The notes under the pieces: generated by a model
Told to the model about the DNA's origin: nothing
Seen by the model: the letters and a program-made list of their open reading frames with translations, nothing else
The model's database searches: none
Part shown: positions 3,226 to 64,000 of the stretch, one piece after another
Layout: every line of letters starts with the position of its first letter
How positions within the stretch are numbered: position 1 is the stretch's first letter
From: Guillardia theta CCMP2712
Taxonomy: Eukaryota > Protista > Cryptophyta
Assembly (NCBI RefSeq): GCF_000315625.1
Contig: NW_005434634.1
Span: forward strand, 524,191-588,190
Direction: 5' to 3'
Length of the DNA stretch: 64,000 nucleotides
Position numbers and translations under genes: made by a program

Positions 3226-5856
3226 ATGGCATCGAAGATAGAAAGGATAGAGGATAATGTCTCAGAGGTAATGATACTTCGACTGTGTGTTATGCATGAT
3301 GTTGAGTCAACAGTCCGGAGATCCATCTGCATTTCTGAACAAACGCTGCAATGTACGGAAGGTTTACAATGTTGTCAAAGCAAAGCTTCATGCTCGAAAA
3401 CTAGGAGCATCGGTATGTGGAGGCATAGCATCGAAACTGATGCTTCCTGACTTCGTTCAGTTTATGCGGTATGGATGCTTTTTAGCAATCTACATAGCAG
3501 TGGTTCTGGATCAGAAAAATGCGACAGTCAAGCAATCCCTGGATAATGCGTTCGACACATACTTTGTGAAAGGTTTTCAGGAATTCTGTGTATTGATTTC
3601 AAGTTGACACGAATGATCAAGCAACTTTCCGAGATCCATCTTCTCTCGAATTTAAAGGATGGTATGACATCGTCACCATTGACGATTTCTGGAATTGGTT
3701 AGAACACATTTGTAATGATTTCATGGATGACCTGGTGAATGTAGGCACCAATATCTTCTTATTCCTCGCTTGATCATCGAAGACAATTACGATTATGGCT
3801 CTCCGCCACTTCTTCCAGAACAGGCTAGTAGAATGGATGCTGGGGAGAAATTTTTTGTATGACAGAATATCAAAAACACAGAAGTACAAAATCTTAATGC
3901 ATAACAAAATTACTGGTGGATTCACGATGATGCAAAGAAGAGCCGACACTCGGTAAAACTTTGAATTTCAGATAAGTGAATAACTCATGTCTCGACTAGG
4001 ACGTGTCCGATCTTACGCAAGTATCTTGAATTCATGCCACACTGCACCTATGAGTTATATGCCAGCGGCACTGTGGGCAAAGTCAATCGGTAAATACCTG
4101 GATTGCATAGCGCATGATTGAAAAGTGTGTGTGTAGGTCAACATTCATTGGCGCGAGGGGCGAAGTATTTCGATACGACGAAAGGCCTGCTGTTTTCCCT
4201 TATCAGGACTTTGGGTACTTTGAAACCTTTCCGAGGAATCAGAGTCTCGCTCTACAGAGGCTGCTCGAGTTGAAGGTAGTTGCTGTTCTGTGACAATTGC
4301 TTCTGACCGATTCCTCCATTCAGTCACAGAGATGGATTGACGCTCAGACAAAATATTATCGATTGGATTTCGTATCTTTGAATACCAACGTGGGGCTATT
4401 CACGTATGTGAAGCTAGTTGCAAGATTCAGCAACACAGGATCGATTCTTCTTAGTCATGATATTTCAAATCTTCCGGCGTCAACATACCGAACCTCTCGT
4501 CAAAAACTGAGGTATTGCTCGATGGTATGCCACCGACATGACTTATGGTTGCAGGTTTGCCGGTGAAATCATCCTGATTCTTTTATGGTCATTGTACGTC
4601 CTACACGAAATAAAGGTGATTAGGGAGAGGTCAAGAGAAAAGGACAGTCTGGCGAATGCCTTGTATCAAAGTGCAAAGCGGCTATCAACTCTGCAGCTCT
4701 TGATCTTTGCCTGTATTATAGCAATGTGGGCCACAATTGTGCGAGAGCTCGAATCTAAGTACTCCAACCTGATCATCACAAGCCACGCCATTACCACCAA
4801 GAACCCGCCGAATCAACCTCCAGACTTTTTTTATGTCATTGCTCTGGTGGATGCCTATTTCATCTTGAACGGCATCAATATGCTCTTGTCTTTCTTTCGA
4901 TGTATCGAGTACTTGGAATTCAATTATTCTCTTTCTCGATTGACGGAAACATTCAAGTTCATGAGGAAAACTTTGCCGCAATTCCTTTTGATCTTCTGCA
5001 TAGTTGTCCTTTCTTTTATGCTAATGAGTCATCTCATGTTTGGATCGAAGTTGGCGATGTTCTCATCTTTTGGATCGGCACTGTCAGGAATCTTCTCAGT
5101 GTTGATTGGTGACATCAATTACTTTCAGCTCATGGACGCGGACTCGGTGGCAGCGCCCATCTTCTTCTATCCGCTTCTGTTTGTGATGATCTTCGTGGTT
5201 TTGAATCTCGTGATTGCAATTATCATCGATGCTCATGTGGCGATGACGGCTGAGAAGGATGTTGCTCTCCGCTCATGGATGAAAGATGTTGTCGACTTGC
5301 CCCTTACCACGCAGCTCTGGGATGGTGTCCTTCATTACCTGGAGCCGATTCGCTTCCTGTTGCCACATGCTCTGTCCGCTAGGTACGATCGAGTGAGCAA
5401 GGAGAACATCATCGACGCCTTCAACGTCTTGGAAGGGATTGAACTTCCCAGTCATGACAAATCACAAGTCAACCTCGAACGTATCTCTCTCATGGACTTG
5501 CGGCTGCTTCTTCGGGATCGCAACATCACCGAGCAGAGGCTGGCTTCGATCTTCGAGCATTATGGAGCATGGGCTGAGGAGGAGGAGCCGGTGGATACTG
5601 AGGTGACTTGTTCAAGATTTCTTCCGACACTGATAGAACTTTTCAGAAACTTGCAGATACTGACAAATTGGCGTATGCTGAGTTGCTACAAGAGGCCACG
5701 AGTGGTGCGTGTTGTTCGCTTGCGATTCAGTTCATGACGTTTCCAGCAGAGATCGAGAAGCTGTTGTCAGAGATCCAAGCCTCCATGCAGTTTTCTCAAG
5801 ACCTGCAGAAGGAGGCTGAAGAGCAGCTGGACTTGCTTATTGACGCTCACATCTGA
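3226..5856 (+). CDS. Polycystin-2 (TRPP)-like cation channel, multi-exon
   Basis: Contains 'RWIDAQTK...DFVSLNTNVGLFTYVKLVARFSNTG' (TOP domain), six TMs, pore region 'SHLMFG...FSSF...LIGD' and 'FVVLNLVIAII', and a C-terminal coiled coil. Exons are joined by ~50-nt GT-AG introns. Confidence 0.85.
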
Positions 5857-16190: not shown

Positions 16191-17222
16191 ATGCGCTCTC
16201 GCCATGCTGTCGCCTTTTCTCTTCTGGCAGCGATCTTGACGCATGCCGGGGTTCCAGGATCGCGCGGGCGCATCCCAGGACGAAGGATGGCATGTTGGCA
16301 GATGCTGAGATTGAGGGGACATGGAGGCGAGTTTGATTACTTGCCGGATGAAGGTCTCTTCATGAGTACTGAGGAGGAGGAGCCCCGGCCGCGAGAAGAA
16401 GGAGCGCCGATCACAAGCCTCCCGGAAGCTATCCTCACCCGAGCTGAGTTAGAGCAAGTCAAGTACTGGAAGAGGGTCGAACGGTCCATGGAGGCTGAAG
16501 AGCAGGATAGCGCCAATGACACCATACCGTATCCCGTTGAGAAACTATTCGTAAGCAGCAACACTACGGACACTTCTTGGCGAGCCATGGAACTCATGAA
16601 GGAGTGTACCATGAACGCAGTGCAAGGCAACGCCGAGATGTCAGACGGATTTCTCGTGTTTCAAGACATGTTCGAAGTGGGAGAACAGTTGGGACTGTCG
16701 TTTTTCCATCAATTCTTGAGGTTTGTCATTGCGCTCGCCAGAGATGGCAAGGCTGAGACTGCGGACGGGGAGAGGGTGTTCGAGTTCATTGTAAATCAGG
16801 GGATTCGTCCTACAAAAGAAACTTACATCCTCGTGATGAATGTCATATGTGAGGGAGCTAAACAGGACCCACAGCGAGGATATCTTTCGGAAGGATATCG
16901 ATGGTATGCAAAATTCCGGAAAGACGGGTTTGAAAGTGACGAGGAAGTAAGAGAGGCGTATTTTGAGGTCTACGAGGCGCAGAGCCCCAACGTCTATGAC
17001 GTGGATTTCTATCGAGATAACTGGTGCGTGCTCTATAGTGCTGAAGACCGCCTGTGGCAAGGAATTCCTGAATTCGGGATAGAACCGCACGGTTCCTACA
17101 TTGATTTGATCCCTGAAGAAGATTTATGTAACAGTACTATACAAGAGATTTTCAAGGGAGAAGACAACGAGACATCTTCAGACATCAACATGACTGAGAG
17201 CGAATATTCGAGTTCTTTCTAG
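16191..17222 (+). CDS. Signal-peptide protein with degenerate PPR-like repeats
   Basis: Hydrophobic N-terminus followed by 'MLRLRGHGG'. 'ERVFEFIVNQGIRPTKETYILVMNVIC' and 'EGYRWYAKFRKDGFESD' resemble PPR motifs. Confidence 0.65.
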   Translation: MRSRHAVAFSLLAAILTHAGVPGSRGRIPGRRMACWQMLRLRGHGGEFDYLPDEGLFMSTEEEEPRPREEGAPITSLPEAILTRAELEQVKYWKRVERSMEAEEQDSANDTIPYPVEKLFVSSNTTDTSWRAMELMKECTMNAVQGNAEMSDGFLVFQDMFEVGEQLGLSFFHQFLRFVIALARDGKAETADGERVFEFIVNQGIRPTKETYILVMNVICEGAKQDPQRGYLSEGYRWYAKFRKDGFESDEEVREAYFEVYEAQSPNVYDVDFYRDNWCVLYSAEDRLWQGIPEFGIEPHGSYIDLIPEEDLCNSTIQEIFKGEDNETSSDINMTESEYSSSF

Positions 17223-18211: not shown

Positions 18212-21200
18212 ATGCGAGCGGTCGGGATGGAGCTGCTTGTCACTCTCCTCTTGAGCTTCATCCTCGCACATCCTGCAGCAAGTCAGACGCTCTCATGCAC
18301 CAAGAAGATGAAGCTCCGCGACATCATCGCCACTTCAGACCTACTCGAAGCCTCCGACAGCCTCGGGGAACTCGTCAAGTGCTTGAAGATCGCGGTAGCC
18401 AAGGACAAGACATCCTCTCAGCTATGGCGGCGGTTGTCCTCTGCTGTCGTGAGATACGATGCTGTCGAGGCCTTGCGGCTCATCGAGGATGGTCTGGCTG
18501 CTGTCGAGCAGGCGAACGCCCCGGGCTCGGTTGGCCTGTGGGCCATGAAGGCAGAATTCCTTGACAAGCTCGGATCGGACGAGCAAGCAGAGGCAGCATA
18601 CAAGGAGACCAGAGCGTTGCTTCCACAGTCAGACCTGACATGCTACAATCTTGGCTTCTTCTACATGACCAGGAACAGGTATGATGAGGTAAGTGTTGTG
18701 GTGCCAAGTGATCGACAGAACCTAAGATGATCCTAGGCTCTTGCCGCCTTTCTTGAGGCTGCGAAGCTCAACCCAAGATCGGGACGGAATGCTGAGGCTG
18801 TTGGAGCAGTCTACTTCGGCAACGGGATGGAGGAGGAGGCGCTTCCATGGATGAGAAAAGCTGTCGAGCTCTCACCCGATGAACCCAATGCGAGGATGAA
18901 CCTTGCGAATGCGCTGGGGAAATTAGAGAAGTCAAACGAGGCTGTGCAAGCATACATGAATGTGCGACTTTAGGTTTAGCTCTCTCAGATTGATCCTTCT
19001 TGAAGGTGTTGAGGTTGGATCCCACCAACGAGGACGCCGCCTGCAAGTACGCTTATTTCAGTATCCAGGTACGACGACTTTGATTTCTGTGCGGAAAGAT
19101 GAAACTTCAGGCTGAAGGTTTGCAATTGGAAAGACTATAACAACTACATCAAGACGATCAAAACCATCGTCAAGAATTCAATTCGTCAAGGACGGAAATC
19201 AAGTTTGACTCCTTTCAACGGCTTGATCATGCCGATCAGCATCAGCGATCAACTGCTTCTCGCTAGAAGCTACGCGTCAGCCTCTAGAGCTCAACAGCTT
19301 CCTCCTCCTTCCCGCTTTCATCGACGGTCTCTTGCACCTCCAATGGCTGGAGCTGACATGCGGCAGAGATCGCGTCCGAGTCGGCTACCTGTCTGCTGAC
19401 TTCCGCAACCACCCCATGGGCAGAGAGCTGTCTGCCCTGCTGCCTCTGCATAATCGATCAGGAATGAGAATGCGCATTGTTTTGCGCTCTCCTTGACCCT
19501 GCCATCCAGATTTCGTCTTCATTTGTTACGCTCAGAACCCCCCGCACGCAGTTCACGACGGGAAGTACCGGAAGATGGTGAGGAGGACGAGGACGAGGAG
19601 GACGAGGACGAGGACTCACTCGTGCTGACCGTGACTGCCAAGTTCGTCGACTCGTCGGAGGCGCTGAGAGAGATCAACCCGCTGTCGGACGAGGAGGCAG
19701 CAAAGATGGTGGGAGCACAAGAGTTCGCCCTCCCATGGAAGTGACAGTTCGCCTTAGATCCGAGACGACCAAATCGACATCCTCGTTGACTTGATGGGAT
19801 ACACGCACGGGGCGCGGGAGGGGTTGCTTGCAATGAAACCAGGTGCTCCTCTGCCTTGGCTCCTGCTCTTCCTCCACAAGCTTCGCTCCTCCTTTGCTTC
19901 TCCAACCCAGAATGTCCGTCCTTCCGTGATGACATGGAGCAGGGCGCGTGCAACTCGGCTTCAAGGGCTACATGAGCACGACAGGAGGAGATTTTCTATC
20001 CCACCTGGTCTCTGATGCAGTTAGTGTACCTCCTGAGCTTGCTGTCTTTTACTCCGGTCAGTTGTTGTTGAGAAGGAAACCCATGACGCTTCCTAGAGAA
20101 ACAGCTGCAGCTCGGAATGCTTTTCTCGTCCTCCACTCATGCTATCAATCACCCGGAGATGCTGTCCTCCAGTCTGATCTCGTGAGCCTCTCCTTGCACC
20201 CTCCTGCAAGTTGCTCCAGTCACACCACAAGGACAGCCGTAAGGAAGCTGGTCTACCCGACAAGATGTTTATCTTCGCATGCTTCAACACGCTCTACAAG
20301 GTATATCCTTCCTTTTTTCTCCCTTTCCTCTCTCTCCTCTAGCTCATCACTCGTTGATCTTGAGCAGATAACTCCAACACTCTTCCTTGCATGGCTCAAG
20401 ATCCTCAAGAACGTCCCCAAGAGGTTTCAGATCCCCAGCCCATTTGCAGTTGACAGCTCGCAGTGTCCTCTGGTTGCTCGAAGAACCGGCAGACGCGAAG
20501 GCACACTTATGCAACTTTGCACGCGAAAGAGGAGGTTGAAGGAGGAGGCGCTGGTGGTGATGGTGGTGGTGGTGGTGGTGGAGGAGGACGAGGAAGAAGA
20601 GGAGGACGAGGACTCATCAGTGACTCTCTCCTACTCAAGTTGATTGCAAGCGCCTGATCTTCACCAAGAAAGTTCCCCTTGAGAAACATCTGCAGGTGTG
20701 CCAGTAGTCTGCTAGGTAGCGGGAGCAGAGATTGTGACAATCTGTCAGGTGAAGGCGAACGCAGACTTGTTTCTCGACACACCCATGTACAACGCTCACT
20801 CAACAGCCGCCGACGCCTTATGGGCAGGGTGAACCACTTCGTTGCCTCCCCCCCCTCCCCCCCCTCCCCACCCCCCCCTCAGATGTAGTTGCTGTCTGCC
20901 TGCCGTGTATCTCTGCTCCTGGACTCGAACTCACTTCCTCCTGCGCGCCTGTGACGCACTCATGACAGCGTTCCCGTCCTCACGCTTGCGCGAGAGAAGA
21001 TGGCCGCACGAGTGGGAGCCTCACTTGCTCTCAGCCTGCACATGCCTGAAGTACCCTAGTGTCCTCCCCTGCCGCTCTGATTCTTCACCAGCTCATCGTC
21101 AGGAACATGGAGGAGTATGTGAGCGTAGCGACCTTGCTGGCTAGGAGGAGGCGGAAACTGCAAAGAATCAGAGAGAAGCTTCTCAGGATGCGGAAGGATA

Positions 21201-24212: not shown

Positions 24213-26504
24213 ATGGCGGCCATGGCTCAGAGGAAGCGAACGGGAAGCGGGATCAGCTTGCGCCCTCGCCTCCTCCTCTCTGTCCTTCCCTGCCTTTCGC
24301 TCCTTCTGCTCTCAGCTGTAGATGCGTTTGTCATTCGGGGTTCTCTCATTCCGCGCAGGGCAACCGCCTCAAATTGGTGCTCCAACCAAAGGATGCCCTC
24401 CCTCCGTACGGCTTCCCGTCCCAACATTCTTCGCATGACAGCCACAGCTCCGGAAGTTGAGACAAACTATGACGAGGTCACTGTTGACAACATCCGCAAC
24501 ATCGCAATCATCGCTCACGTTGACCATGGCAAGACTACCCTTGTCGACAAGCTTCTTGAAGCCGCGAAGGAGAACATTGACAACGAAGACGGAGGCGATC
24601 GTGCGATGGACAGCATGGACTTGGAGCGCGAGAGAGGGATCACCATCATGTCGAAGGTGACATCCATGGCATGGAACGGCGTTAAGCTGAACATCGTCGA
24701 CACCCCTGGCCACGCTGACTTCGGAGGAGAAGTCGAGCGAGTGATGTCCATGGTTGACGGAGTCTGTCTTCTCGTCGATGCCACCGAAGGACCGATGGCT
24801 CAGACGAAGTTTGTGCTGATGAAGGCGCTTGCCCGCGGTATCAAGCCGCTGGTGGTCATCAACAAGGTCGACAGGGACACGTCCAGGGTCGACGAGGTCG
24901 AGGGCGAGGTCTTCGACTTGATGTGCAACTTGGGCGCCACAGATGAGCAGCTGGACTACACGACTGTGTACGCTTCTGGTAGAAATGGCTGGGCTACTCT
25001 GTCGCACCCTGATGGACCTCGTGAGAACATGAACGACCTTCTCGACACCATCGTCAAGACGGTGCCCAAGCCTTCTGTCTTGGATCGTCCGAGCTTTTCC
25101 ATGGTTGTCACCATGATCGAGGGAGACTCCTTCCTTGGAAGGATCTGCACCGGCAGAGTGAGCTCTGGCGTAGTCAAGGTCGGTGACACTGTCCAGTCAC
25201 TCTCTGCCGACGGCCAGAAGGTTGACACTGGACGTATTACCAAGATTCTTGCAAGGAAGGGAACGGGCAAGGTTCAGTTGAACTCAGCGAAGGCTGGAGA
25301 CATTGTACAAGTTGCTGGTCTGCAGAAAGCAACAGTCGCACACACTATCTGCTCGCCAGATGTGGAAGAGCCTTTGCCCTCGGTTGCCATCGATCCTCCC
25401 ACCCTCGCCATGACCTTCTGTCCCAATGACTCTCCTCTCGCGGGCAAAGACAAGCTTTCAACCAAGCTCACGTCTCAGATGATTGGAGAGCGTCTCAGGG
25501 CGGAGGCAGAGAACAACATTGCCATCCGTGTCGCTCCATCTGAGGAGAGGTCGGAGGCCTACGACGTTATGGGACGTGGTGAGCTTCAGCTGGGCATTCT
25601 AGTCGAGAACATGCGCAGGGAAGGCTTCGAGCTTGGCGTCTGTCCGCCTCAGGTGCTCTACAAGACCGGGCCCAAGGGTGAAAAGCTGGAGCCAATCGAA
25701 GATGTAGTCGTCGAGGTGGACGATGAGTTCTCCGGAGCTGTCATCAACAAGCTCTCCGAGCGAAAAGCCGTTATGACCGACATGCGTCCAGCTGCAGAAT
25801 CTGGTCGTACTCGTATCACTCTCGAGTGCCCCACTCGTGGGCTTCTGGGTTATCGCTCCATCTTCTTCACCGACACCAGAGGAACTGGTGTTATGATGCT
25901 GCAGTCAGTTGACTCGATCTGACTGGTTGGTAGGAATCATGACCAGGGCCTTCAAGGCCTACGAGCCATACAAGGGTGACTTGGAGAATATTCGCAAGGG
26001 AGTTTTGGTCTCGATGAAGACGGGAGTTGCAACTTCCTACTCCCTCGGCAAGCTTCAGGTCTGCATTCACCTCCCTTGCCTTAAAGGGATCTGACGATAG
26101 CTGCAACTCAGCCCCGAGGAGAGATGTTCATCAACCCTGGTGTGGAAGTCTACCCAGGGATGATCATTGGGGAGCATTCACGCGATAACGATCTCGAAGT
26201 CAACCCAATCGAGGCCAAGCAGGTCTGAAGCTCATCGTTGGAGTACCAATCGTTGCTTATCGCTTGGCAGTTGACCAATATGCGTGCTGCCGGAGCGGAT
26301 GAGAAGATTCAGCTCACCCCACCCAGAGATTTCACCCTGGAGGAGATGATCCCCTACCTTCAACCCGACGAGATGGCTGAGGTTCGCAACGCCTTTCCTT
26401 TCCTTTGAGTCCTCAGGTCTGAATCCTTCCTGCAGGTTACTCCCTCGACTATCCGCATGAGGAAACAGATTTTGGATCCGAACCTTCGCAAGCGTAAGAA
26501 GTAA
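24213..26504 (+). CDS. typA: TypA/BipA translational GTPase with bipartite plastid presequence
   Basis: '[16 protein letters not shown]', 'ERERGITI', 'DTPGHADF', 'NKVD' and '[18 protein letters not shown]'. Signal peptide ends 'VDA|F'. Four short 3' introns. Confidence 0.95.
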
Positions 26505-37383: not shown

Positions 37384-38178
37384 CCCTACCTTCTCCCGGC
37401 CTTGTTCACCTCGTCCTCCCGAGTCCCGGAGTCCTTTCCCTTCAATGTGCCAGTTCTAGTATCTCGTCCCCGGAGTCCTTTCCCTTGTTCACCTCGTCCT
37501 CTTCCTCTTCAATCCAGGGCCTCCTCCTCCACTGCCCCTCTTCACCTTCTCCTCTTCCTCTTCATCTCCCGGCCCTCCTGCCATGTCGGCGCTCACAGTC
37601 AGTCACGGCGCGGGTCTGGCGATGAGTTCGGTTCACGGTTACTGACTCAGCCGGCCCTCTTCCCCGCTCTGTCCTCCGTAGGAACGTACCTGTACAGGTA
37701 CCTGTACCCCACCCAACTTCTTGTTGCACCCCAACTTAAGAGGCCCCTACCCCATGCTTAATCTGAATTGTCTCGATTGAAGGTGGGGGTACTTATGGTA
37801 TGTTAGATAACCCCCACCCCTCAAAGCGGGAGGCCGCATCGGTGTGAGGGATAAAAGAATGAACAGGGGGAGCAGCAGAGGAAGGCAAGTAGCGCAGAGA
37901 AGAGGAGAATAGCACAAGATAGGTAGGAGAGGAGAGTAGGAGGGGAGAGGAGAGTAGATCGAAGATGAGGGCCAGGGTAAGTGTAGCTCAAACAACATGG
38001 AAACAAGGGAGTAGGGAACAGGTATGACCTAGTGGCTGTGACCTCAGGAAAGGAACGATTGGATTTTCCCTTATGACATGAATGTCGAATGCGGAGAGGC
38101 TGAATTGAAACCAGAGCGATGTGTTGATCTTTCCCCGTCGTCTTACCTCTTGGCTTGTTGCAGGGAGGTTTCACCACT

Positions 38179-40411
38179 ATGCCGCACTTCTTTGGGGCAC
38201 GAGTAGATGGTGTAATCATGACTGGACTGAGGGCAGGACGGCAGGGGCTCATTCACTTGTCGCAAGCTCAAGGATGCATCAGCAGGAAACTCTCCACGTC
38301 CAAGGGCAGCGATCTCAATGCGATGGGAAGGACAAGCAGCATGGACCTGCTGAATCCCATTCCAGTGAAATCAAGAGGCAAGCAGGTCACAACATCTGAG
38401 CAGAGGAAAGACTTTCTCCGTGAGGACATTCCCTCGGTGAAGCGAGTCGTCATCAAAGTGGGCACCTCTGTTCTCACGCGGGACAATGAGTTTGGAGTGT
38501 CTTTGACTCGTCTCGCAAGCCTGGTCGAGCAGGTCAGCGCGCTAGTTCACTCGGGGAAGGAAGTAATCATCGTGACCTCTGGAGCTGTTGGCTTCGGCAA
38601 GATGAGGCTTCAAGTTCAGAACGTGCTGTCTCAGACCGTGAGGAACACTCTCTCCTGGGGAGCAAACGCTTCCCCTCCCTCGTTGGACTCTCGAGCCTGT
38701 GCTGCCGCCGGGCAGTCAGGGTTGATGACCCTTTATGACGCCATGTTTTCCCAGTATGGAGTGTCGATCGCGCAGCTTCTCGTGACGATGTCAGATTTTC
38801 AGGTCGATGCTCATCGCGCAAATATGTGCGAGACGATCAAGGAGCTGATCAAGCTGGGAATCGTCCCAGTCTGCAACGAGAACGACGTCTTCTACAGCAA
38901 CACGGAGTCACGGGAGTTCATTATGAGCCATCAGAACACGACCATAACATCGTTCAATCCGAATTTCAAACAAAACATTGACAACGGTATCGACGACGGT
39001 GTTGACCGAGGGGACAAAGTCGTACGTCTTACCGCCAACGACTCGCTGTCTGCTCTTCTTGCCGTGGAGCTCGACGCCCAGCTGATGATCGTGCTGAGCA
39101 ATGTGGATGGGCTATACACAGCTCCTCCAGGTCGCCTGTCGTCCATGGGAGCCACTCCAAAATTATTGCACACGTTCAACCCCGACGATCCTCAAATGGA
39201 GCGACTGGAGTATGGCCGGGACCGGCGAGTCGGACGAGGAGGCATGGCGGCTAAGGTGGACGCGTCAAAGTTTGCGCTGAACCATGGAGTACACTGCATC
39301 CTTGCCAATGGTCATCAGCATGACGTCATCTCCAAGATATTCGAGGGCAGGACCATCGGCACCTTGTTCACCCGCGCGGCTGGACGCGACTCGACGCCCT
39401 ATGTCAAGGGAACGGAGGCGAGGAGCGCTTCTCGGGAGATGGCAAAGTTGCCTTCCAGTGTCAGGAAGAAGGTCCTTGAGCAGATCGTCAAGGATATCAC
39501 GAGGAAGGAAGACGTCATCCTCGCAGCAAACAACGAGGATCTGCAAGAGGCGCTGAGAGCCATCAAGTCCGAGGGCGCCGTCGGTTCAGACCACCGACCT
39601 GACCAGCTCCCTCTCTCCCTGTCAAAACGCAAGTTAAGGTCGCTTGTCCAGAAGATCGACCAGATGACGGCGACGGCTGGCAATGTCGTGGGTCGGAATG
39701 TGAAGTGGTGTAAGGTGACGGACGGGCTCTATCTTGAGCAAGAGACTGTTCCCATTGGAGTGGCTCTGTGCGTGTTCGACAAGGCTTGTCCTGACGTCGT
39801 TCCCCTCCTGGCAAGTCTCTGCATTGCCTCCGGCAACGCTGTCATCTTCAAGTCCTCGCGCGAAAGCTTCCACACTACTCAGATCTTCCACTCGATCATC
39901 ATCTCTGCGCTGAAAGCAAACAATATCTCCGAGAACGCGGTCATCAACCTGGAAGGACGAGACAACCTCGAGGACTTCTTGGTTCTGCAGGATCAGATCG
40001 ACATGGTGATCCCGCGAGGATGCAAGCAGCTCATAGAGTATGTCAACACGCGCACCAAGATTCCCGTCCTCGGAGACACTGAGGGCCTCTGTCACGTGTA
40101 CGTTCACAACGACGCAAATCTGGAGGTTGCAGCTCGAGTGCTGGTGGACTCCAAGTGTGAAGCAAGTTATGCTGGGAGGTATGGAGTGGAAACCATCCTC
40201 GTGCACTCCCATTGGATCGAGACTGGCAAGTTCGAGGAGCTGTTGGAGCCCCTCACCAGCAAAGGAGTCGCTCTCTTCGCCGGCCCTCGCCTCCGCGCTC
40301 AGTTCAAGTCTCAGTCTGCCAAGATGCCTCCTGCATGGTCTTTGAGATGCGAGTATGGATCAAGCGGGTGCGCTGTTGAGGTTGTTGACAGCCTCGAGGA
40401 AGCGATCCAGG

Positions 40412-40449
<38 letters not shown>

Positions 40450-41054
40450 ATTTTGACTTGAATGTGTTGCTAGCATGTCAACGATTACGGAAGCCATCAC
40501 ACGGATGTCATCGTTTGCGAGAGCGGTTGATTCCTCCTCCTCATCCTCCTCCTTCTCTCCTCCTCCTCCTTCTCTCCTCCTTCCCTCTCCCTCCGCTCCT
40601 CTCCCTCCAGTCATGAGTTCTTTGTCAGAAATGGACTCGCGCAAGTTCTCGAGGGAAGTCGATAGCGCCTGTGTCTTCCAGAACTGCAGCACGCGATTCT
40701 CAGAGGGATACAGGTCGAGCCTCATCCTCTTCCTTCTGGCCCTCACCTCTTGTTGTAGCTTTGGGCTTGGAACTGAGGTGGGAGTGACGACCAAGCGAGT
40801 GCCCATGCGAGGGCCGATCGGGATTGAGGGGTTGATGACTTCCAAGTACATCTTGAGGGGCAAGGTAGAATAGAAGAGCTCCTTTCTCTCAAGGCTGATC
40901 CTGTTGCTTCAGGGGCATGCAGTCGCGGACATCGCAGACGGAAAGTCAAAATGGTGAGTGTGGGAGTAGGGAAGAGGGGAGGAGGAGAATCTGATTGTGA
41001 CTCAGGGTCCACGAGAAGAAATGTGTCACTTGCGGTTTGCAAGTGCGCGACTAA
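38179..41054 (+). CDS. P5CS: Delta-1-pyrroline-5-carboxylate synthase-like (glutamate 5-kinase + degenerate glutamyl-phosphate reductase)
   Basis: '[10 protein letters not shown]', '[10 protein letters not shown]', 'GRGGMAAKV', 'DMVIPRG', 'FGLGTEVGV' and '[18 protein letters not shown]'. Last exons read 'GHAVADI...WVHEK'. Confidence 0.9.
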
Positions 41055-45950: not shown

Positions 45951-48203
45951 TCAGCAGAAAACAGTACGAGGAGGAGGAGGAGGAGGAGGAGGAGGAGGAG
46001 GAAATTTGACAGAGAGACGGTAGAAGCACCTGTAGCCGGAGTAGGTGGCAGCTTTGATGAGATGCTTGAGCTCTTCGCTGCTCATCCCTCCTCCTGCTCT
46101 CTCAGCGTCGAGTTTCAGCTGCTGCATCGCATCTTTTTCGCTTCTGATTCTTTCCTCGAAAGCCTCTCTTCCCTCCCTCTGCGCCTTCACCATCATCTCC
46201 AGCTCCTGCAGCTCCTCCGACTTCTCCTCGTCCTGCAGCTCCTCCGCCTCCTCCTTCACCTCTTCAGGCTCCTCCTTCCAGTCCTCAAGGGCCTCAGTGA
46301 TAGACTGAAGTTTCTCCGCGATCTCAGCTGCTTCCTCTCTCCCTCCTCCTTGGCCGCGCCCTTCTCCCTCCAGCTTACTTTCCTCCCCGCTCATTGTTTC
46401 TGTCGCTTCCGCTACCGCGTCTGCAGCATGCTGGAGCCGAGAGCGGTACATGGTCCAGTACAGCTCTCGCGCACGCTCCTCCTCCGTCTTCCCCTCCTCG
46501 CGCTCTTTTCGTATCCTCTGCAACTCTTCTTCGCTGATCAGGCTTCCCCGCCACAGCTTGCTGATCCCATCGATCAGCGGCTTCGCAAAGTTCTCCTGCC
46601 TCTTCATCTTCCCCGTAAAGATCTTCATCCGCTGCGCCATGCCCTCCACCCTTCCTTCCCGCCCTCGTGTCCCTTCCTGCACCTCCGAGCTGCCGACCTT
46701 TCCTGCCTCCTCCTTGTTCCCTTGCCCCTCTTCTCCCCCCTCCTTCTTCTGCTCTTCTTGCCTGTCTTGCTCGAGCTCCTGCTGCTGCTGCTGCTGCTCT
46801 TGATACACCTCAGGCTCTCTGGCAAACTTGCTCGCAGCTTGTCTGCTAGGAGGATGCGATGGCGGCAGCCCCCGAGCTCCTCCTCCCTGCCTGTTCACCG
46901 ACCAGAGGCGCACAGAGCCATCGCGGGAGGAGGAGGCGAAGAAACTGCCGTCAGGAGGCAGCGCAACGTTGGTGATCATCTTGCCATGCCCGAGCACGAC
47001 AGCAAGGCACCTCCACTTCCACCTCTCACCCTCCTGCAGCGGCTGCAGCTGCATCCTGTCTCCTCGCTCCACGGGGCCCCACACCCTCACTGAGTTGTCG
47101 CTTCCCCACATCAAGTTTCCCTCCCCCGAGATCAGCAGCTCTCCTCCATCGCCTCCTCTTGCGTCGAACGCTAGCGTCCTGACCGCTCCCCTGTGGCCAG
47201 ACAGCGAGCTCACGACCTCCCCGTCCTCCACTCGCCACAGGCGGATGACGGAGTCGCTCCCCCCCGAGGCGAGGAGGTGACCTGAGGGGCTGAAGGAGCA
47301 GCACCAGACCTTGGCTTGCGCTCTGCCTCCCAGCACTCTCAGCTGCTCTCCGCTCTTGGTGCTCCAGAGGCGCAGGGAGCAGTCGAGGGAGCCGGAGGCC
47401 AGGAGGCGATCAGAGGGGTGGAACGAGAGGCAGGTGACCTCCTTCTCGTGCCCCCGCAGGGTCCGCGAGACTTCACCGTCGGACAGGCGGAAGAACCGGA
47501 TCAGCTTGTCGGAGGAGGCGGCGGCGATGAAAGTGCCGAGAGGGTCGAACGAGCAGGCGAGGAAGTTGATCCCTCCCGCTCGCATCACTCGCACGCACTT
47601 CCCGTTGCTCACGTCCCACACGCGCAGGGACCCGTCGAAGGAGGCAGAGACGAGCAGCTCCCCCGACGGCGAGAAGCTCAAGCTGTAAACCCACTCAGAG
47701 TGACCGCGAAGAACGCGCAGGCACTCTCCGTCCATCCGCCATAGCCTCACGATACGATCTCCTCCTCCACTCGCAAGGAGGGGGACCAGCGGGTGGAACG
47801 CACAGCACCAGACCGGAGCCTCATGCTCGTTCAGACTCCGAACCTCCTCCACCTCGATCGACTCAGGATAACCGCCCGGCAACGAACCAACCGGAGCCTG
47901 CGCCCTTGTTCCATACAAGCCATCCCCATGCTGATGGCCACATTCCTGCTCCTCTACCCTCCTCTCTTGCTTGGGGGTGCAGGGATACCATGAAACGACC
48001 GAGGGAAGACAACGGAAGGCGCTCGGAGGCTCCAGCACGGTGACCTCGCGGTTCGAGGATGCCAGAAGTTCGTCGCCACCGTAAGATCGAGCGATCAGAT
48101 TCTCGGCAAGAGCGACTCGCCTCTTCTCGGCTTCAAGAGCAGCAACAAGCTCTGAGATCCGACGGTTGCTGTCCTCAAGCTCTTGTTCCAGAGATCCCGT
48201 CAT
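45951..48203 (-). CDS. WD40 beta-propeller (~7 repeats) + coiled-coil protein
   Basis: Repeats such as 'GHSEWVYSLSFSPSGELLVSASFDGSLRVWD'. Confidence 0.9.
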   Translation of the reverse strand: MTGSLEQELEDSNRRISELVAALEAEKRRVALAENLIARSYGGDELLASSNREVTVLEPPSAFRCLPSVVSWYPCTPKQERRVEEQECGHQHGDGLYGTRAQAPVGSLPGGYPESIEVEEVRSLNEHEAPVWCCAFHPLVPLLASGGGDRIVRLWRMDGECLRVLRGHSEWVYSLSFSPSGELLVSASFDGSLRVWDVSNGKCVRVMRAGGINFLACSFDPLGTFIAAASSDKLIRFFRLSDGEVSRTLRGHEKEVTCLSFHPSDRLLASGSLDCSLRLWSTKSGEQLRVLGGRAQAKVWCCSFSPSGHLLASGGSDSVIRLWRVEDGEVVSSLSGHRGAVRTLAFDARGGDGGELLISGEGNLMWGSDNSVRVWGPVERGDRMQLQPLQEGERWKWRCLAVVLGHGKMITNVALPPDGSFFASSSRDGSVRLWSVNRQGGGARGLPPSHPPSRQAASKFAREPEVYQEQQQQQQELEQDRQEEQKKEGGEEGQGNKEEAGKVGSSEVQEGTRGREGRVEGMAQRMKIFTGKMKRQENFAKPLIDGISKLWRGSLISEEELQRIRKEREEGKTEEERARELYWTMYRSRLQHAADAVAEATETMSGEESKLEGEGRGQGGGREEAAEIAEKLQSITEALEDWKEEPEEVKEEAEELQDEEKSEELQELEMMVKAQREGREAFEERIRSEKDAMQQLKLDAERAGGGMSSEELKHLIKAATYSGYRCFYRLSVKFPPPPPPPPPPPRTVFC

Positions 48204-51607: not shown

Positions 51608-53178
51608 ATGGCGCGAGCAGGGATAGCGGTGATGGTGATGCTGGTTCACTTGACGGGAGGAGGAGAGACGAGGAGAGGAGGAGGAGGAGGAGGAGGAGAC
51701 CTGGAGGAGATCAGACTGGCGCATGCTGGTAGCTCCTACCTGAACCTCCTCGATACAAGAAGGAGATGCGACTCCTCGAGCTTGAAAATGGTTAAAACAC
51801 TTGGCTTTGCCATGCTGGCTTAGGGCGACTAACTTTCTTGGCATCTAGTTACGCTTGAGAGGAGGACAAAGAAGAAGATATGAGGGAAGTCAGGGAACCA
51901 GGAAGAATGATGACAGGAGGCCAGGCAAGCATGCTCTTCAGTAAATTTTCAGAATCCGCTCACTATGTTTCAGATTCGTCGCCTAGGATGTTCTTGTTGG
52001 TGTCGATGACAGACTCAGCCGACCCTGGTTCATGTTCACAAAGCAAAACAAGTATCTGACAGTCATGCAACAGAATGCATCGTCAACGATGTGATCAAAG
52101 CCTGCGCTGAAGATGTAGAAAGCAACGAAGACGAACCATTTCCGTCAATTGGTCGCACCGTCAGGTGCTGTGCATATGTGGCAGGTGGCTGATGTGACTG
52201 GAACGTGAGCAGGTTGTCGAAGAGATGTACTGGAGTACATTCAAAGCGAGCAACGTTCTTGCTGGCTCCACGGAAGGACCCCACCCATCTCCTAGATCTC
52301 CTCAAGGTCGTGGACGGAGTAATTCTATTGCACGCAGGTGAAGTTGACTCCCTCCCTTTTCCCTCTCCTCATCTTCAAGCCCAGGCGTTGAAATGCCTTC
52401 TCCCTCCTCCATGACGCACTCGCTCGACGGCTATCGGCTCCTTCCTGGTGGCCATGGTGCTCTGGCAGTGAACCTTCTGCGAGCTCAAGGGCTACCTGCT
52501 ATCGTCGCTGCCTCGTACGATGACAAGAACCTGTCGTCGTCAGTGAACGTCAAGGTTGCCTCAGCTTCTCGTCCTCCTTGTGACCGCAGCATGCAGATTC
52601 GGAAGGGGAGGGCGCAGTTTCTATGCGCAGGTACGAAGCAAGGGCAGTGAGTTATCATGACGATTTCGGCAGAGGGACTGGGCGAGGAGAAGGATTTGAG
52701 ACCGTTCGACCTGCACGACAAGCAGCAAGTTGAAGGTGTGAGCGCCTCGTGGGTCTTGTTCGATGACGAGGATGGGGCAGGCATGATCCGCTCTCTCATG
52801 AACCGAGAGCCCAAAGGGCCGGCATGGCGGCAACCATACGCCTACATGATGGCGAGCAATTGCTACTTCTCCTCCTACGTGAACAGCTCAAGTGAGGCCG
52901 ATGAGATGCTGGAGAATGGGAAGGAGGGGACGAGCGAGAAGCTCGTGACTACCGTCGTGATCGAAGGATTCCTCCGCTCCCGGCCTCTGAGCGCGGATCA
53001 GCTCGTGCACGTGTCAGGAGTTGGAACGTTCAAAGTTCACTCGATCTCGCTGACTTCTCCAAGCAAGGAGTTGATCAGCAAGAGGAAGTTCTCACCGACA
53101 GAGAAAGTCGGAGAGCAGGAGAGCCGACCAGAGAACGATCAGGAGGACGAGAGTGAACATGCGAATCTGGATGTCGGT

Positions 53179-53213
<35 letters not shown>

Positions 53214-55988
53214 GGAGGAAGGGGAGCACGGACCAGCTTCTAAGAGGCTCCGTAAACCAGAATACTTTCAAGATTGGGAAGGTGCCGCAGTTGACGGCAT
53301 TTCTGAAGCCGAAGAGGTAGGAGACCATAAGGAGGGCAGGCAGGTCGAAGCAGCCGGTGGAGTGAGAGAGGAAGGGAGCAACGTTTCTGGGATCCAAGAG
53401 CGGCTCCAGGAGGTTAAGACGAAGCGACACATTGCAAGCTTGTTCGTGGGGACGGAGAAAAAGAAGATGCATCCTCATACCGCCTCCTTCCTCGACGAGC
53501 GAGACCCTTCCAACCCCCTCAAGATGTTCTCCAACCTTCGTTCCCTCTCTGCTGCCCAGCAAGCCCTGCCGCTTGATGGCAAAGCTGACGGCGAAGTGAA
53601 CGGCGTTGCGCTTGTTTCCCATCAAGGCGGCAAGGCTGAACGGCGACTGCGAGCGCAGCTGAGAGGAGATGAGTGGGAGTTCCTAAAGGGGCTGGAAGGT
53701 AGGGAGAGTCTTTGTACGCGGGAGGGTTCAAGTCTAAGTGACAGGACTGGGAGAGAAGATCGACTTGGAGGCAGAGAAGGCTGAGTACCTGAGACTTCGA
53801 AGGTGCGGGAGGGATCAGTGAGGGAAGAGGAGGAGGCAGGAAGCTGGAGAAGGAGGGAGGGAGGGAGGGAGGGAGGGAGGGAGGAAAGGAGGCTGGTTTA
53901 ATTAGCAGCAGGGAAATTGAAGATCAAATTCTATTTCCGGATGAAGTTGACACGCCGCTCAACGTCTCCGTCGTCGACGTGATTCCCCTGCCTCCCTCGT
54001 CTGACCTTCTTCATCCCAACCTTCTACCTCGCTTCCTCTACCTATGTCCCTTCCTCTGCCTCCCGTCCTCTCTCTCTCTCCCCTCCTCTGACTTTGTGCA
54101 GACGTACGGCGACTTCACCCCCCTGCACGATCTTGAGAAAGCCTCTTGGGACCCAACAGCCAACCTGCCAGCAGAGTATCGGTGAGATCAGCATTCCACA
54201 TGCCTCATCCTCCTCCTCCTCCTCCTCCTCCTCCTCTCCTCCTCCTCCTCCTCCTCCTCCTCCTCCTCCTCCTCCTCCTCGCAGTTTTCAACTTCATGAT
54301 CCTTTCGACTGTCTCGGCCTCATCTCGTCCTCTCGCTCCTCTATTTTCCCCGTCGCTGGGCCTCATCGACTCATCTCAGTCTCGCAGACGAATCTATCAG
54401 TTCAGCAACTTCAAGGTCAGACCGTCTTGCCTGTCGTCGCGTCTGAGCGACTTCAGGGGATCCAAAAGCGATCGTTGAAGGCCAACGACCAATTCCTCAA
54501 GTCAGCCAATGCAGGAGAAGTGGAGGTGATCATCTCGACTTGACCTCCTCCTCCTCCCTCCACCTTCTCCATCTGCCTGCTTCCTTGATGGTTTCACTTT
54601 CTATTCCAGGCCGCTCAGCCAGGGCAACACATCGCCGTCAAGCTTCTTGGAGTTCCCGAGGGACAGGCAGGAGGAGGAGGAGGAGTTCGGTGGGGCGGGA
54701 GAGGGGAGGGAGCAAGGGGAGAGGGGAGGAGGAAGAGGAGGAGTTGCGAGCCATTCGCTGAGGAAGAATCAGGTCGATGCGATCATGCGGATGCACGTTG
54801 AAGGCAAACCAGTGCTATTGTCCTCCGTTCTTCGACATGAGAACAAGAGGCAAGGAGAGCGGGGAGGAGTGGAGAAGAAAGATGAGAGATGGGGAGAGGA
54901 GAGGAGAGGAAGGGAGAGGTGAGAGAAGGGACGATGAGAGGAGAAGAGAGAAGGGAGGAAGAGAGAGGAGAGGGATGAGAAGGGAAAGGAGAGAAGCGAA
55001 GGGAGAGGAGGAGGGATTGCCCTGACACCTATGCAGAGGACTGCTGAACATGCAAGTGGACAGACACGCGAGCCTTCCAGAACGAGAGATTGTTGAGAGC
55101 GAGGATGTAAGAGAGGAGGAGGAGGAGGAGGACCAGGAGGAGAGAGAGGCTGAGGGCCTTGTAGGAGCTGGAGTTCCACCTGGGGTTCAGACGAGAATCC
55201 GGTCGTCCGATTTTCTCGCATGCTGTCGGCAGCACCAGCACGGGACAGTTGAAATTCATTGTGCAGAAATTTCTACTGTACGAGAAAGGTAAGGGAGGAG
55301 GAGGAGGAGGAGGATGGACATAACTGGCAGCAGGCAAGGTCTTTGCTTCCATCTTCGCTCCAACCGTGTTTCCCAACGTTCCTGTCCTGATGTTTCGTCC
55401 CAAAGACTCTAGGTGTCCCTTTGCTGCTCGCATCTCCTTCTGATCTCATCTCATCTCATCTCATCTCATCTCATCTCGTCTCATCTCGTCTCTATCCAGG
55501 CTTGTGGGCACGGGCACAACCATTGACATGGATTGCGATCGGATCCTCTTGAAGAGAATCACCTTGACAGGATATCCCTACAGGCACCTCTTCTTCTCCT
55601 CCTCCTCTCTCCTCCTCCTCCTCCTCCTCCTCCCCCTCCTCCTCCTCCCCCTCCTCTTCCTTCTCTCCCTCCTCTTCTCTTCTCCTCTCCTTATCGTCGT
55701 TCAGGATCCACAAGCTCACTGTTGTCGTCCGCTGGATGTTCTTCTTCGAATCCGACGTTCGCGCCCTGACCGGCTGCAAGCTGGTGAATCTCGAGCTCTC
55801 ACTTCCCAGCTGACCGCCAGCAGACGAGCAAGTTTGGGCTCGAGGGGGAGCTGCTGGGGCCTCTGGGAACGCGCGGGCTGATGAAGACCAAGTGGAGCGA
55901 CAGCGTCTCGTTCAAGGACACAGTCTGCCTGCACCTCTACAAGCGAGTCTTCCCTTCCCCCCTCTCTCCCCCCTCCCCTGTCTCTTAG
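51608..55988 (+). CDS. TSR1: TSR1 pre-40S assembly factor (BMS1/TSR1 family), divergent, with signal-like presequence; multi-exon
   Basis: 'LLDLLKVVD', 'GFLRSRPLSADQLVHVSGVGTF', 'FPDEVDTP', 'WDPTANLPAEY', 'RILLKRITLTGYP', 'VVVRWMFF', 'PLGTRGLMK' and 'DTVCLHLYKRVFP'. Confidence 0.88.
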
Positions 55989-62996: not shown

Positions 62997-64000
62997 ATGT
63001 CATACTTGCTCATCCTCCTCCTGCTAGCCTTCCACGCTCCGGCTTCCACATCTCTCTCTTCCACTCCTTCCTATCCTCTTCAGTCGGAGCAGCATGTCCC
63101 CACCCTCCGAGGAGGCAAGCCCTTCGGCTCCCCGATGCTCGATGTGTCCAAGGTGACGAGACCGCAAGCAGCTGAGCTCGCGACGAGTCCAGCAGCAGGC
63201 GAGCAGGAGAAGCCGCAACGGCAGAGGAGCAGGGAGATGTCCAAGCCCAGCCTGCTGCAGATCGACTCAGCAGATGTGCAGAAGCAGGTGGAGGATTTCA
63301 TCAAGAGCGCGGCAGAGCTGCTGCAGCAGACGGAAGAGCTTCTGCGGCCGAGGAGTGGTCACAGCGTCACGAGACTCGCTCAGCGCAATCGGCTGTTAGT
63401 GCAGCGCGCAAAGATCCTCCGTTTGCAGTCTGTGGATCCCTCGACCCACAAGAAGGTGACGCGGCTCTTCTCCTCTCCCTTCTCGCCCTGGCTCATCTCG
63501 TGCAGATCGATGAGAAGATCGCTCAGCTCGAAGCCGCTTGGAACGCTTACGCTCAGATCTCACCACTTGAAACCCAGGTGAGGCAAATCGGCCATCCCTC
63601 CTCCTCTAACTCGCTCTCGCAGGAGTCTCTTACCGCTGTTCCAATGGAGGTGAAGGCGGTTTCAAGCTTGGTGAGCGAGGAGGACGAGATGCGGGCGAAC
63701 AAGAAGTGGGTTCCTTCTTCTCCTCCGCCTCGACTGCTGATCCTCTTCATCGCCGTGCAGGAGAGTTCCTGTGACCTTCACTGTGAGCTGCAATTATACG
63801 GACGTGGGCGATCAATTGCTGCTGATAGGGGACCAGCCCGAGCTAGGTGAGAGCGAGACGGAAGGAGGGGAGGCTGAGCCGTATGACAGGCTCTTGGAAC
63901 CCTCTGGCATCGGTTCTCATGACGACGACGCCCACCATGTATCCGCTGTGGCAGGCGACTGTTGACCTACCAGCGGGACAAACTGGCGCCCCTTCTTTTT
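62997..64000 (+). CDS. Signal-peptide protein with CBM20 starch-binding domain (runs off window)
   Basis: 'MSYLLILLLLAFHAPA..TLRGG', then CBM20 'VTFTVSCNYTDVGDQLLLIGDQPELG|SWNP...YPLWQATVDLP'. Confidence 0.85.

What the first reader, a model, noticed from the sequence alone, without database searches (positions are those of the whole stretch)
51608..51866. Ubiquitin-tail mimic (LRLRGG/LRGG) ends the presequence of three unrelated proteins: candidate deubiquitinase-cleaved import tag for the periplastid compartment
Seen: removing the phase-0 intron 51791-51848 from TSR1 gives 'MARAGIAVMVMLVHLTG...SSLKM|LRLRGG|QRRRY', the exact last six residues of ubiquitin. The ORF track misses this. The CBM20 gene has signal peptide + 'TLRGG' (63105-63116) and the PPR-like gene has signal peptide + 'MLRLRGHGG' (16302-16328). 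None has a ubiquitin fold. The two stromal-type 'A|F' proteins (CAAX protease, TypA) lack the motif. Established: deubiquitinases cut after LRGG, complex red plastids import through the ubiquitin-dependent SELMA machinery, and cryptophyte starch and nucleomorph ribosomes reside in the periplastid compartment (PPC). Inference: a ubiquitin-specific protease acts as the transit peptidase for PPC cargo. RGG-ending presequences may already have been remarked on in other algae, so check the literature before claiming novelty.
Basis: partly seen in the sequence, partly recalled or inferred. Interest (0 to 1): 0.85.

Follow-up and report, generated by a model that had tools for sequence, protein, structure and literature searches.

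The report
Ubiquitin-tail motif ends periplastid import leaders
In the alga Guillardia theta, proteins sent to the remnant cytoplasm and nucleus of its red-algal endosymbiont carry an import leader that ends in a copy of ubiquitin's last residues (LRLRGG), most likely the site where a still unidentified, probably ubiquitin-type, protease cuts the leader off.

Summary
Real and general. The genome is Guillardia theta. The three strings are present. The TSR1 intron is well formed but no RNA could be laid, and a motif-free splice is not excluded. Genome-wide, 17/30 LRLRGG-pattern hits follow an in-frame Met plus signal-peptide-like stretch, against 3/60 for permuted motifs (p=8e-8; roughly 200 genes). 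All six G. theta proteins GFP-localised to the periplastid compartment (PPC), and the antibody-localised nucleomorph H2A, carry the motif. None of about 84 aromatic +1 (stromal-type) cryptophyte leaders does. Relatives of TSR1 and EF-1alpha keep it while the rest of the leader diverges; several diatom PPC homologues have xRGG. A published diatom N-terminome holds one acetylated N-terminus directly after IPRGG, in the PPC deubiquitinase homologue. Best reading: it is the cut site of the unknown PPC leader peptidase, probably a deubiquitinase-type enzyme (about 0.6); the enzyme is not identified. The PPR-like example (LRLRGHGG) is doubtful. I found no description in searchable papers, but could not read Gould 2006 or Curtis 2012. 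This scan already reported the motif on other pieces of this genome.

The parts
51608..51790 (+). TSR1-type gene, exon 1: Met, signal-peptide-like stretch (about the first 18 codons, no aromatic residue after it) and Gly/Ser/Arg-rich transit-like linker
51791..51848 (+). 58-nt phase-0 GT..AG intron with CTAAC branch point; predicted, not confirmed by RNA
51849..51866 (+). LRLRGG, identical to the last six residues of ubiquitin; proposed end of the leader and cut site (after the second Gly)
   Evidence: same position in TSR1 relatives
51867..51924 (+). basic start of the proposed mature TSR1 (rest of exon 2)
   Evidence: relatives also have a basic stretch after GG
51925..51973 (+). predicted GC..AG intron needed to join exon 2 to the conserved next exon
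   Evidence: tblastn of a relative to the next exon
52810..53052 (+). AARP2CN domain of TSR1; one of three AARP2CN loci in the genome
62997..63104 (+). leader of the CBM20-like gene: signal-peptide-like stretch plus Ser/Pro-rich linker
63105..63116 (+). LRGG at the end of that leader (shorter form; Pro at the -6 position)
   Evidence: CBM20 hit weak
16191..16304 (+). leader of the PPR-like gene: signal-peptide-like stretch plus Arg-rich linker
16305..16328 (+). LRLRGHGG, a deviant form that lacks the RGG ending; doubtful member
   Evidence: single-Gly variants are at background genome-wide
24213..24500 (+). control: A|F (stromal-type) leader of the TypA-like GTPase, no motif

Best explanation
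The motif (mostly [LMI]-x-[LMV]-[RK]-G-G) is the C-terminal end of the transit-peptide-like part of the bipartite leader of nucleus-encoded PPC and nucleomorph proteins. The signal peptide is removed in the ER and the protein crosses the periplastid membrane through SELMA (established). In the PPC a protease that reads the ubiquitin tail then cuts after Gly-Gly and frees the native N-terminus. Shown here: the motif marks PPC cargo, sits at the leader/mature boundary and is conserved. Supported by one published data point: cutting after RGG in a diatom. Inferred: cutting in G. theta, its location in the PPC, and that the enzyme is a deubiquitinase (USP, UCH, OTU or ZUFSP type).
For: Enrichment: 353 pattern hits against 187 and 167 for permutations. 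Signal-like leader upstream in 17/30 against 3/60, p=8e-8. Gly-to-Ala variants equal their reversed controls (92 vs 104; 144 vs 145). Cargo: nucleomorph H2A (L017 = P0065; antibody localisation in PMC5443833), EF-1alpha and carbohydrate phosphorylase, Trm112 and cytosolic-type LeuRS (by eye). Six of six GFP-localised G. theta PPC proteins carry it. About 0 of 84 aromatic +1 cryptophyte leaders carry it; FBPase, aldolase and thioredoxin paralogue pairs split cleanly by +1 Phe versus motif (counted by eye). It abuts native starts: EF-1alpha GG|GKEK, Trm112 GG|MK, TSR1 relatives GG|KM and GG|RM. It is conserved in six TSR1 clusters that form one group, support 94/85, and in 4/4 metagenomic EF-1alpha hits. 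T. pseudonana protein 21460 has an acetylated N-terminus at residue 233, directly after IPRGG. No Pro follows GG in 17 leaders (weak). A TPL peptidase is postulated but not named (PMC5756292), and a putative nucleomorph-encoded deubiquitinase exists (Gt2_270; PMC6559170).
Against: No cleavage data for any cryptophyte protein. The one measured site is in a deubiquitinase and may be self-cleavage. Toxoplasma PUBL is not cut at its internal RGG and does not need it. ptDUP has no cryptophyte orthologue. No USP or UCH locus lay next to a listed exact LRLRGG on scaffolds 1-22 (inconclusive). From my own knowledge, most deubiquitinases need the ubiquitin fold and cut short tail peptides poorly. Many diatom PPC homologues lack RGG. 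One A|F diatom transporter has PRGG (TPT4b) and diatom Omp85 has LRGGG, so the split is not absolute outside cryptophytes.
Confidence: 0.62

Rival explanations
1. The leader is cut after GG, but by a di-glycine-specific protease that is not a deubiquitinase, for example a CE-clan Ulp1/SENP-like enzyme or a membrane protease of the periplastid membrane.
For: Position 5 varies freely (R, S, P, Q, G, H) and diatom sites are looser. From my own knowledge, adenovirus protease and coronavirus PLpro cut linear xxGG sites without a ubiquitin fold. No cryptophyte ptDUP.
Against: The commonest form is the exact ubiquitin hexapeptide, not the SUMO tail; Arg or Lys at position 3 is constant in all leaders seen. 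The G. theta PPC ubiquitin precursor ends its first unit in LRVRGG, so a ubiquitin-type cutter is probably needed there anyway (inference).
Confidence: 0.18
2. The motif is a sorting or retention signal read by a ubiquitin-tail-binding component of SELMA or a PPC receptor; cutting is secondary or happens elsewhere.
For: Near-perfect split between PPC and stromal leaders. PUBL's RGG is not cut.
Against: The +1 residue already explains PPC versus stroma sorting (PMC12136025). The motif abuts native N-termini, and one measured N-terminus follows RGG.
Confidence: 0.12
3. The motif is a passive relic: leaders arose from ubiquitin-fusion genes or were copied between genes by exon shuffling, and it has no present role.
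For: G. theta has many ubiquitin-fusion genes (PMC6332867). In TSR1 an intron sits directly before the motif.
Against: Flanking leader residues show no conservation between genes or species while the motif is kept. Codons vary freely among hits. Single-Gly variants are not enriched.
Confidence: 0.04
4. Local rival for this gene only: TSR1 is spliced 51791-51861 and has no motif.
For: One canonical intron gives an open frame to the conserved exon and needs no GC donor.
Against: It skips the first AG after the branch point. Six related TSR1 clusters have xLRGG followed by basic residues at this point. The gene has another apparent GC donor.
Confidence: 0.1

Closest known systems
Bipartite targeting sequence for the periplastid compartment (signal peptide + transit-peptide-like region without +1 Phe; Gould et al. 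2006, ASAFind 2.0 PMC12136025)
   Same: Same architecture and the same proteins; TSR1 and the genome hits fit it.
   Different: In the texts I could read it is defined by the +1 residue and the composition of the first 20-25 residues, with no conserved C-terminal motif and no named peptidase. The LRGG end is an added feature.
Ubiquitin-fusion precursors (polyubiquitin, Ub-S27a, Ub-L40, algal Ub-NiSOD; PMC6332867)
   Same: LRLRGG directly before a mature protein, cut after GG by deubiquitinases.
   Different: No ubiquitin fold precedes the motif here; a signal peptide and a variable linker do.
SELMA ubiquitin system: ptDUP and PUBL (PMC12412216, PMC5487736)
   Same: Same compartment; the T. pseudonana ptDUP homologue itself starts after IPRGG in vivo.
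   Different: ptDUP is proposed to remove conjugated ubiquitin from cargo lysines, not to cut leaders. It is absent in cryptophytes, and PUBL's internal RGG is not processed.
Linear di-glycine sites cut without a ubiquitin fold (coronavirus PLpro LxGG, adenovirus protease, USP1 self-cleavage); from my own knowledge, not tested
   Same: A ubiquitin- or SUMO-type protease cuts a short tail mimic to mature a protein.
   Different: Those are viral polyproteins or single enzymes; here it would be a compartment-wide import peptidase acting on hundreds of host genes.
Stromal processing peptidase site of complex plastids (PMC3774753)
   Same: Removes the second part of a bipartite leader.
   Different: Acts in the stroma on +1 Phe leaders with Leu at -2; no RGG was found in the held transit-peptide table.

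Membership tests
PPC bipartite targeting sequence | N-terminal signal peptide | tested here: met
   Hydropathy heuristic only; the TSR1 h-region is short. Relatives P0045 and P0059 have clearer ones.
PPC bipartite targeting sequence | No aromatic residue at +1 of the transit-like part | tested here: met
   By eye for the three window genes and the published PPC set; cleavage sites not predicted with SignalP.
PPC bipartite targeting sequence | Linker rich in Ser/Thr and basic residues, poor in acidic residues | tested here: met
   20 residues before the motif: 23% S/T, 12% K/R, 5% D/E; after GG 19% D/E. The TSR1 linker itself is more acidic and Gly-rich.
PPC bipartite targeting sequence | Extension absent from cytosolic-type relatives | tested here: met
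   Cytosolic-type TSR1 relatives start without extension; three AARP2CN loci in the genome; only one H2A has an extension.
PPC bipartite targeting sequence | Experimental localisation of the three window proteins | not testable with these tools
   Only other motif-bearing proteins have published localisations.
Ubiquitin-fusion precursor | Ubiquitin fold before the di-glycine | tested here: not met
   Leaders are about 30-110 residues of signal peptide plus variable linker with no ubiquitin sequence, by inspection.
Deubiquitinase substrate site | L-x-G-G / LRGG tail with both glycines required | tested here: met
   Both Gly-to-Ala variants at background; not met by the PPR-like gene.
Deubiquitinase substrate site | Cleavage directly after the second glycine | tested here: inconclusive
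   One published diatom N-terminus, 2 acetylated spectra; none for cryptophytes.
Deubiquitinase substrate site | A deubiquitinase in the same compartment that cuts it | tested here: inconclusive
   USP and UCH loci mapped but their 5' ends could not be fetched; nucleomorph candidate Gt2_270 from the literature.

The most novel reading that the evidence does not exclude
Algae with red-derived complex plastids use a deubiquitinase-type protease as the general leader peptidase of the periplastid compartment. Hundreds of host genes carry a ubiquitin-tail mimic as the cut site, the rule is shared at least by cryptophytes and part of the diatom PPC proteome, and it has not been described.
Probability: 0.45. 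Interest if true: 0.92.

Novelty: new variant of a known kind. Interest (0 to 1): 0.8.

Why it matters
The peptidase that removes PPC leaders is postulated but unnamed in the papers I could read, and PPC proteomes are predicted mainly by the absence of a +1 Phe. A positive six-residue mark gives (1) a much sharper predictor of the nucleomorph-supporting proteome, about 200 genes with the exact form in G. theta; (2) a precise cut site and enzyme class to test with GG-to-AA mutants and ubiquitin activity probes; (3) a link between SELMA's ubiquitin machinery and cargo maturation, and a character shared by cryptophytes and diatoms that bears on how complex plastids spread. For this gene it implies that the nucleomorph's small-subunit ribosome assembly draws on a host-encoded TSR1.

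Tried and rejected
The spliced TSR1 model was searched exon by exon only; the joined search was left out. The reversed-pattern control is inflated by GGNGG repeats and was replaced by permuted and Gly-to-Ala motifs. The H2A homologue search was swamped by animal histones. The methyltransferase and TSR1 searches gave no new relatives. A one-intron rescue search added no leaders. Other xRGG strings in the window (37824-, 61516+, 20888-) have no Met-signal leader and were rejected. Not held: Gould 2006 MBE, Curtis 2012, Stork 2012 and two Eukaryotic Cell identifiers that I tried for the G. theta starch papers. Five motif-directed paper searches found no description of the motif. Rejected: chance (p=8e-8), ubiquitin-fold fusion, and a general secretory or stromal motif.

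Full report
Source. The assembly has 87,145,349 bases in 669 contigs. Proteins of fetched loci match Guillardia theta CCMP2712 records at 98-100%, so the window comes from this cryptophyte, which keeps a nucleomorph and a periplastid compartment (PPC).

Observation. The three strings are at the stated places. In TSR1 the frame from ATG 51608 stops after 71 codons unless spliced. The 58-nt intron 51791-51848 has a GT donor, a CTAAC branch point and ends at the first AG after it, which puts LRLRGG in frame. Reaching the next conserved exon then needs a GC-AG intron, 51925-51973; a single 71-nt intron to 51861 would give an open frame without the motif. The spliced model was searched exon by exon only. 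The gene is TSR1-type (AARP2CN) and one of three AARP2CN loci. The CBM20 call is weak (E 4e-4). The PPR-like call rests on Atlas look-alikes, not Pfam, and its LRLRGHGG lacks the RGG ending.

More than chance. The degenerate LRLRGG pattern has 353 hits in the genome; the permutations RLLRGG and LRRLGG have 187 and 167. Among the first 30 hits of each, an in-frame Met with a signal-peptide-like stretch 18-140 residues upstream was found in 17, 2 and 1 (Fisher p=8e-8). The signal test is a hydropathy heuristic and misses some leaders visible by eye (L013, L026). Scaled up this is roughly 200 genes with the exact form in one exon; variants and intron-split cases such as TSR1 come on top. Replacing either glycine by alanine gives counts equal to their reversed controls (92 vs 104, 144 vs 145), so both glycines matter.

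What carries it. The motif-bearing loci encode eukaryote-cytosol or nucleus proteins that have no use in the stroma or the secretory path: EF-1alpha, histone H2A, carbohydrate phosphorylase, a zinc-knuckle protein, a methyltransferase, and by eye Trm112 and a cytosolic-type LeuRS. The H2A is annotated as nucleomorph-targeted. PMC5443833 shows by antibody that the one H2A with an extension lies in the nucleomorph. In the ASAFind 2.0 supplement (PMC12136025), all six G. theta proteins localised to the PPC by GFP fusion carry the motif before the mature domain: ugg-t, EF-1alpha, 14-3-3, RRM1, cyclophilin and Ubc8. HemE and Iddi were only 'listed as examples', have an aromatic +1 residue and lack it. 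In the same paper's 101 cryptophyte 'plastid' sequences I counted by eye about 84 with aromatic +1 and none with the motif in the leader. Five of the other 17 have LR[LM][RK]GG: an FBPase, a thioredoxin and an aldolase, whose +1 Phe paralogues lack it, and two nucleotide transporters. Chaperone and protease homologues that look like ER or secreted proteins also lack it.

Conservation. The closest relatives of this TSR1 are a Hanusia phi protein (71%, N-terminus missing) and unnamed environmental proteins. Six clusters show MRLRGG, LQLRGG, LRLRGG or LGLRGG, one apparently split by an intron, followed by basic residues and often a Met. Most cytosolic-type TSR1 proteins start without an extension. 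The leader-bearing proteins form one side of a branch with support 94/85 (short alignment, not starred). A metagenome scan for LRGG directly before the EF-1alpha start gave four hits. Three show a signal-type leader, the fourth is cut at the contig end, and none has a ubiquitin fold; two of the four look like the same organism. Their taxa are not named; cryptophytes is my inference. In Thalassiosira pseudonana, homologues of PPC proteins show a looser xRGG at the same boundary (sCdc48, sCdc48-2, Der1-1, sSec14, TrxH, sPUB, ptDUP), but many others do not.

Is it a cut site? The motif abuts native N-termini: EF-1alpha continues GKEK, Trm112 continues MK. Composition switches from Ser/Thr-rich and acid-poor to acid-rich across it, and no Pro follows GG in 17 leaders. 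One direct measurement exists. The T. pseudonana N-terminome (PMC3774753, Table S5) lists protein 21460 with an N-terminus at residue 233, seen in two acetylated spectra; the paper treats acetylation as proof of an in vivo end. That protein is the ptDUP homologue, and the peptide begins directly after IPRGG. It is a single case, in another lineage, and could be self-cleavage. Three other candidate identifiers were not found in the held tables. Against general cutting, Toxoplasma PUBL keeps its internal RGG uncut and does not need it.

Which enzyme? The exact ubiquitin hexapeptide points to a deubiquitinase. A TPL peptidase in the PPC is postulated without a name (PMC5756292). ptDUP is absent from cryptophytes (PMC12412216), while all four nucleomorph genomes encode a putative deubiquitinase of UFM1-peptidase type (Gt2_270; PMC6559170). 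I mapped USP and UCH loci but could not fetch their 5' ends. None lay beside a listed exact motif on scaffolds 1-22, which is inconclusive. From my own knowledge, most deubiquitinases need the ubiquitin fold, while some viral and CE-clan proteases cut linear xxGG sites, so a non-deubiquitinase di-glycine protease stays a live rival. My odds: motif marks PPC leaders 0.95; cut after GG 0.8; by a deubiquitinase-type enzyme 0.62.

Novelty. It works like a ubiquitin-fusion junction but is not one (no ubiquitin fold). It belongs to the known PPC bipartite leaders, to which it adds a conserved end. Five motif-directed full-text searches found no description, and the main text of the 2025 PPC predictor paper does not mention it. 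The motif is plain in the six sequences of Gould et al. 2006, which I could not read, so an earlier remark is possible. Earlier agents of this scan reported the same motif on other pieces of this genome. I read these after forming my view and do not count them as independent support. Verdict: real, general and testable; interest 0.8.

Noticed in passing
PMC12136025 Appendix S9: XP_005839318, XP_005829422, XP_005842093, XP_005823901, KAJ1484853: Five sequences in the published cryptophyte 'plastid' scoring set lack +1 Phe and carry LR[LM][RK]GG; they are probably PPC or periplastid-membrane proteins, which would imply PPC FBPase, aldolase, thioredoxin and a nucleotide transporter.
   Followed up: partly
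window 51925-51973 and 54850-55036, + strand: Two apparent GC-AG introns in the TSR1 gene; not confirmed by RNA.
   Followed up: partly
window 18212-19600, + strand: Signal-peptide-like start followed by TPR repeats, with neither +1 Phe nor LRGG; looks like an ER or secretory O-GlcNAc-transferase-like gene.
   Followed up: no
L006 (G000:C1 about 1200040, - strand): Carbohydrate (starch/glycogen) phosphorylase with signal peptide and LRLRGG: candidate PPC starch phosphorylase.
   Followed up: partly
L027 (G000:C6 about 516440) and L029 (G000:C6 about 1148270): Trm112-like and cytosolic-type leucyl-tRNA synthetase genes with the same leader: candidate imports for nucleomorph translation.
   Followed up: partly
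gt_155024 in PMC12136025 Appendix S3: The putative PPC ubiquitin precursor has a signal peptide, a divergent ubiquitin-like unit ending LRVRGG and then ubiquitin; a possible source of the leader motif.
   Followed up: no
PMC2222254 and PMC5635587: Diatom Omp85 (LRGGG) and the A|F transporter TPT4b (PRGG) have the motif although they go beyond the PPC; envelope membrane proteins may be trimmed in transit.
   Followed up: no
window 45951-48200, - strand; 38155-40458, + strand; 4538-5734, + strand: WD40 propeller protein; amino-acid-kinase plus aldehyde-dehydrogenase fusion (P5CS-like); polycystin-type channel. Ordinary neighbours.
   Followed up: no
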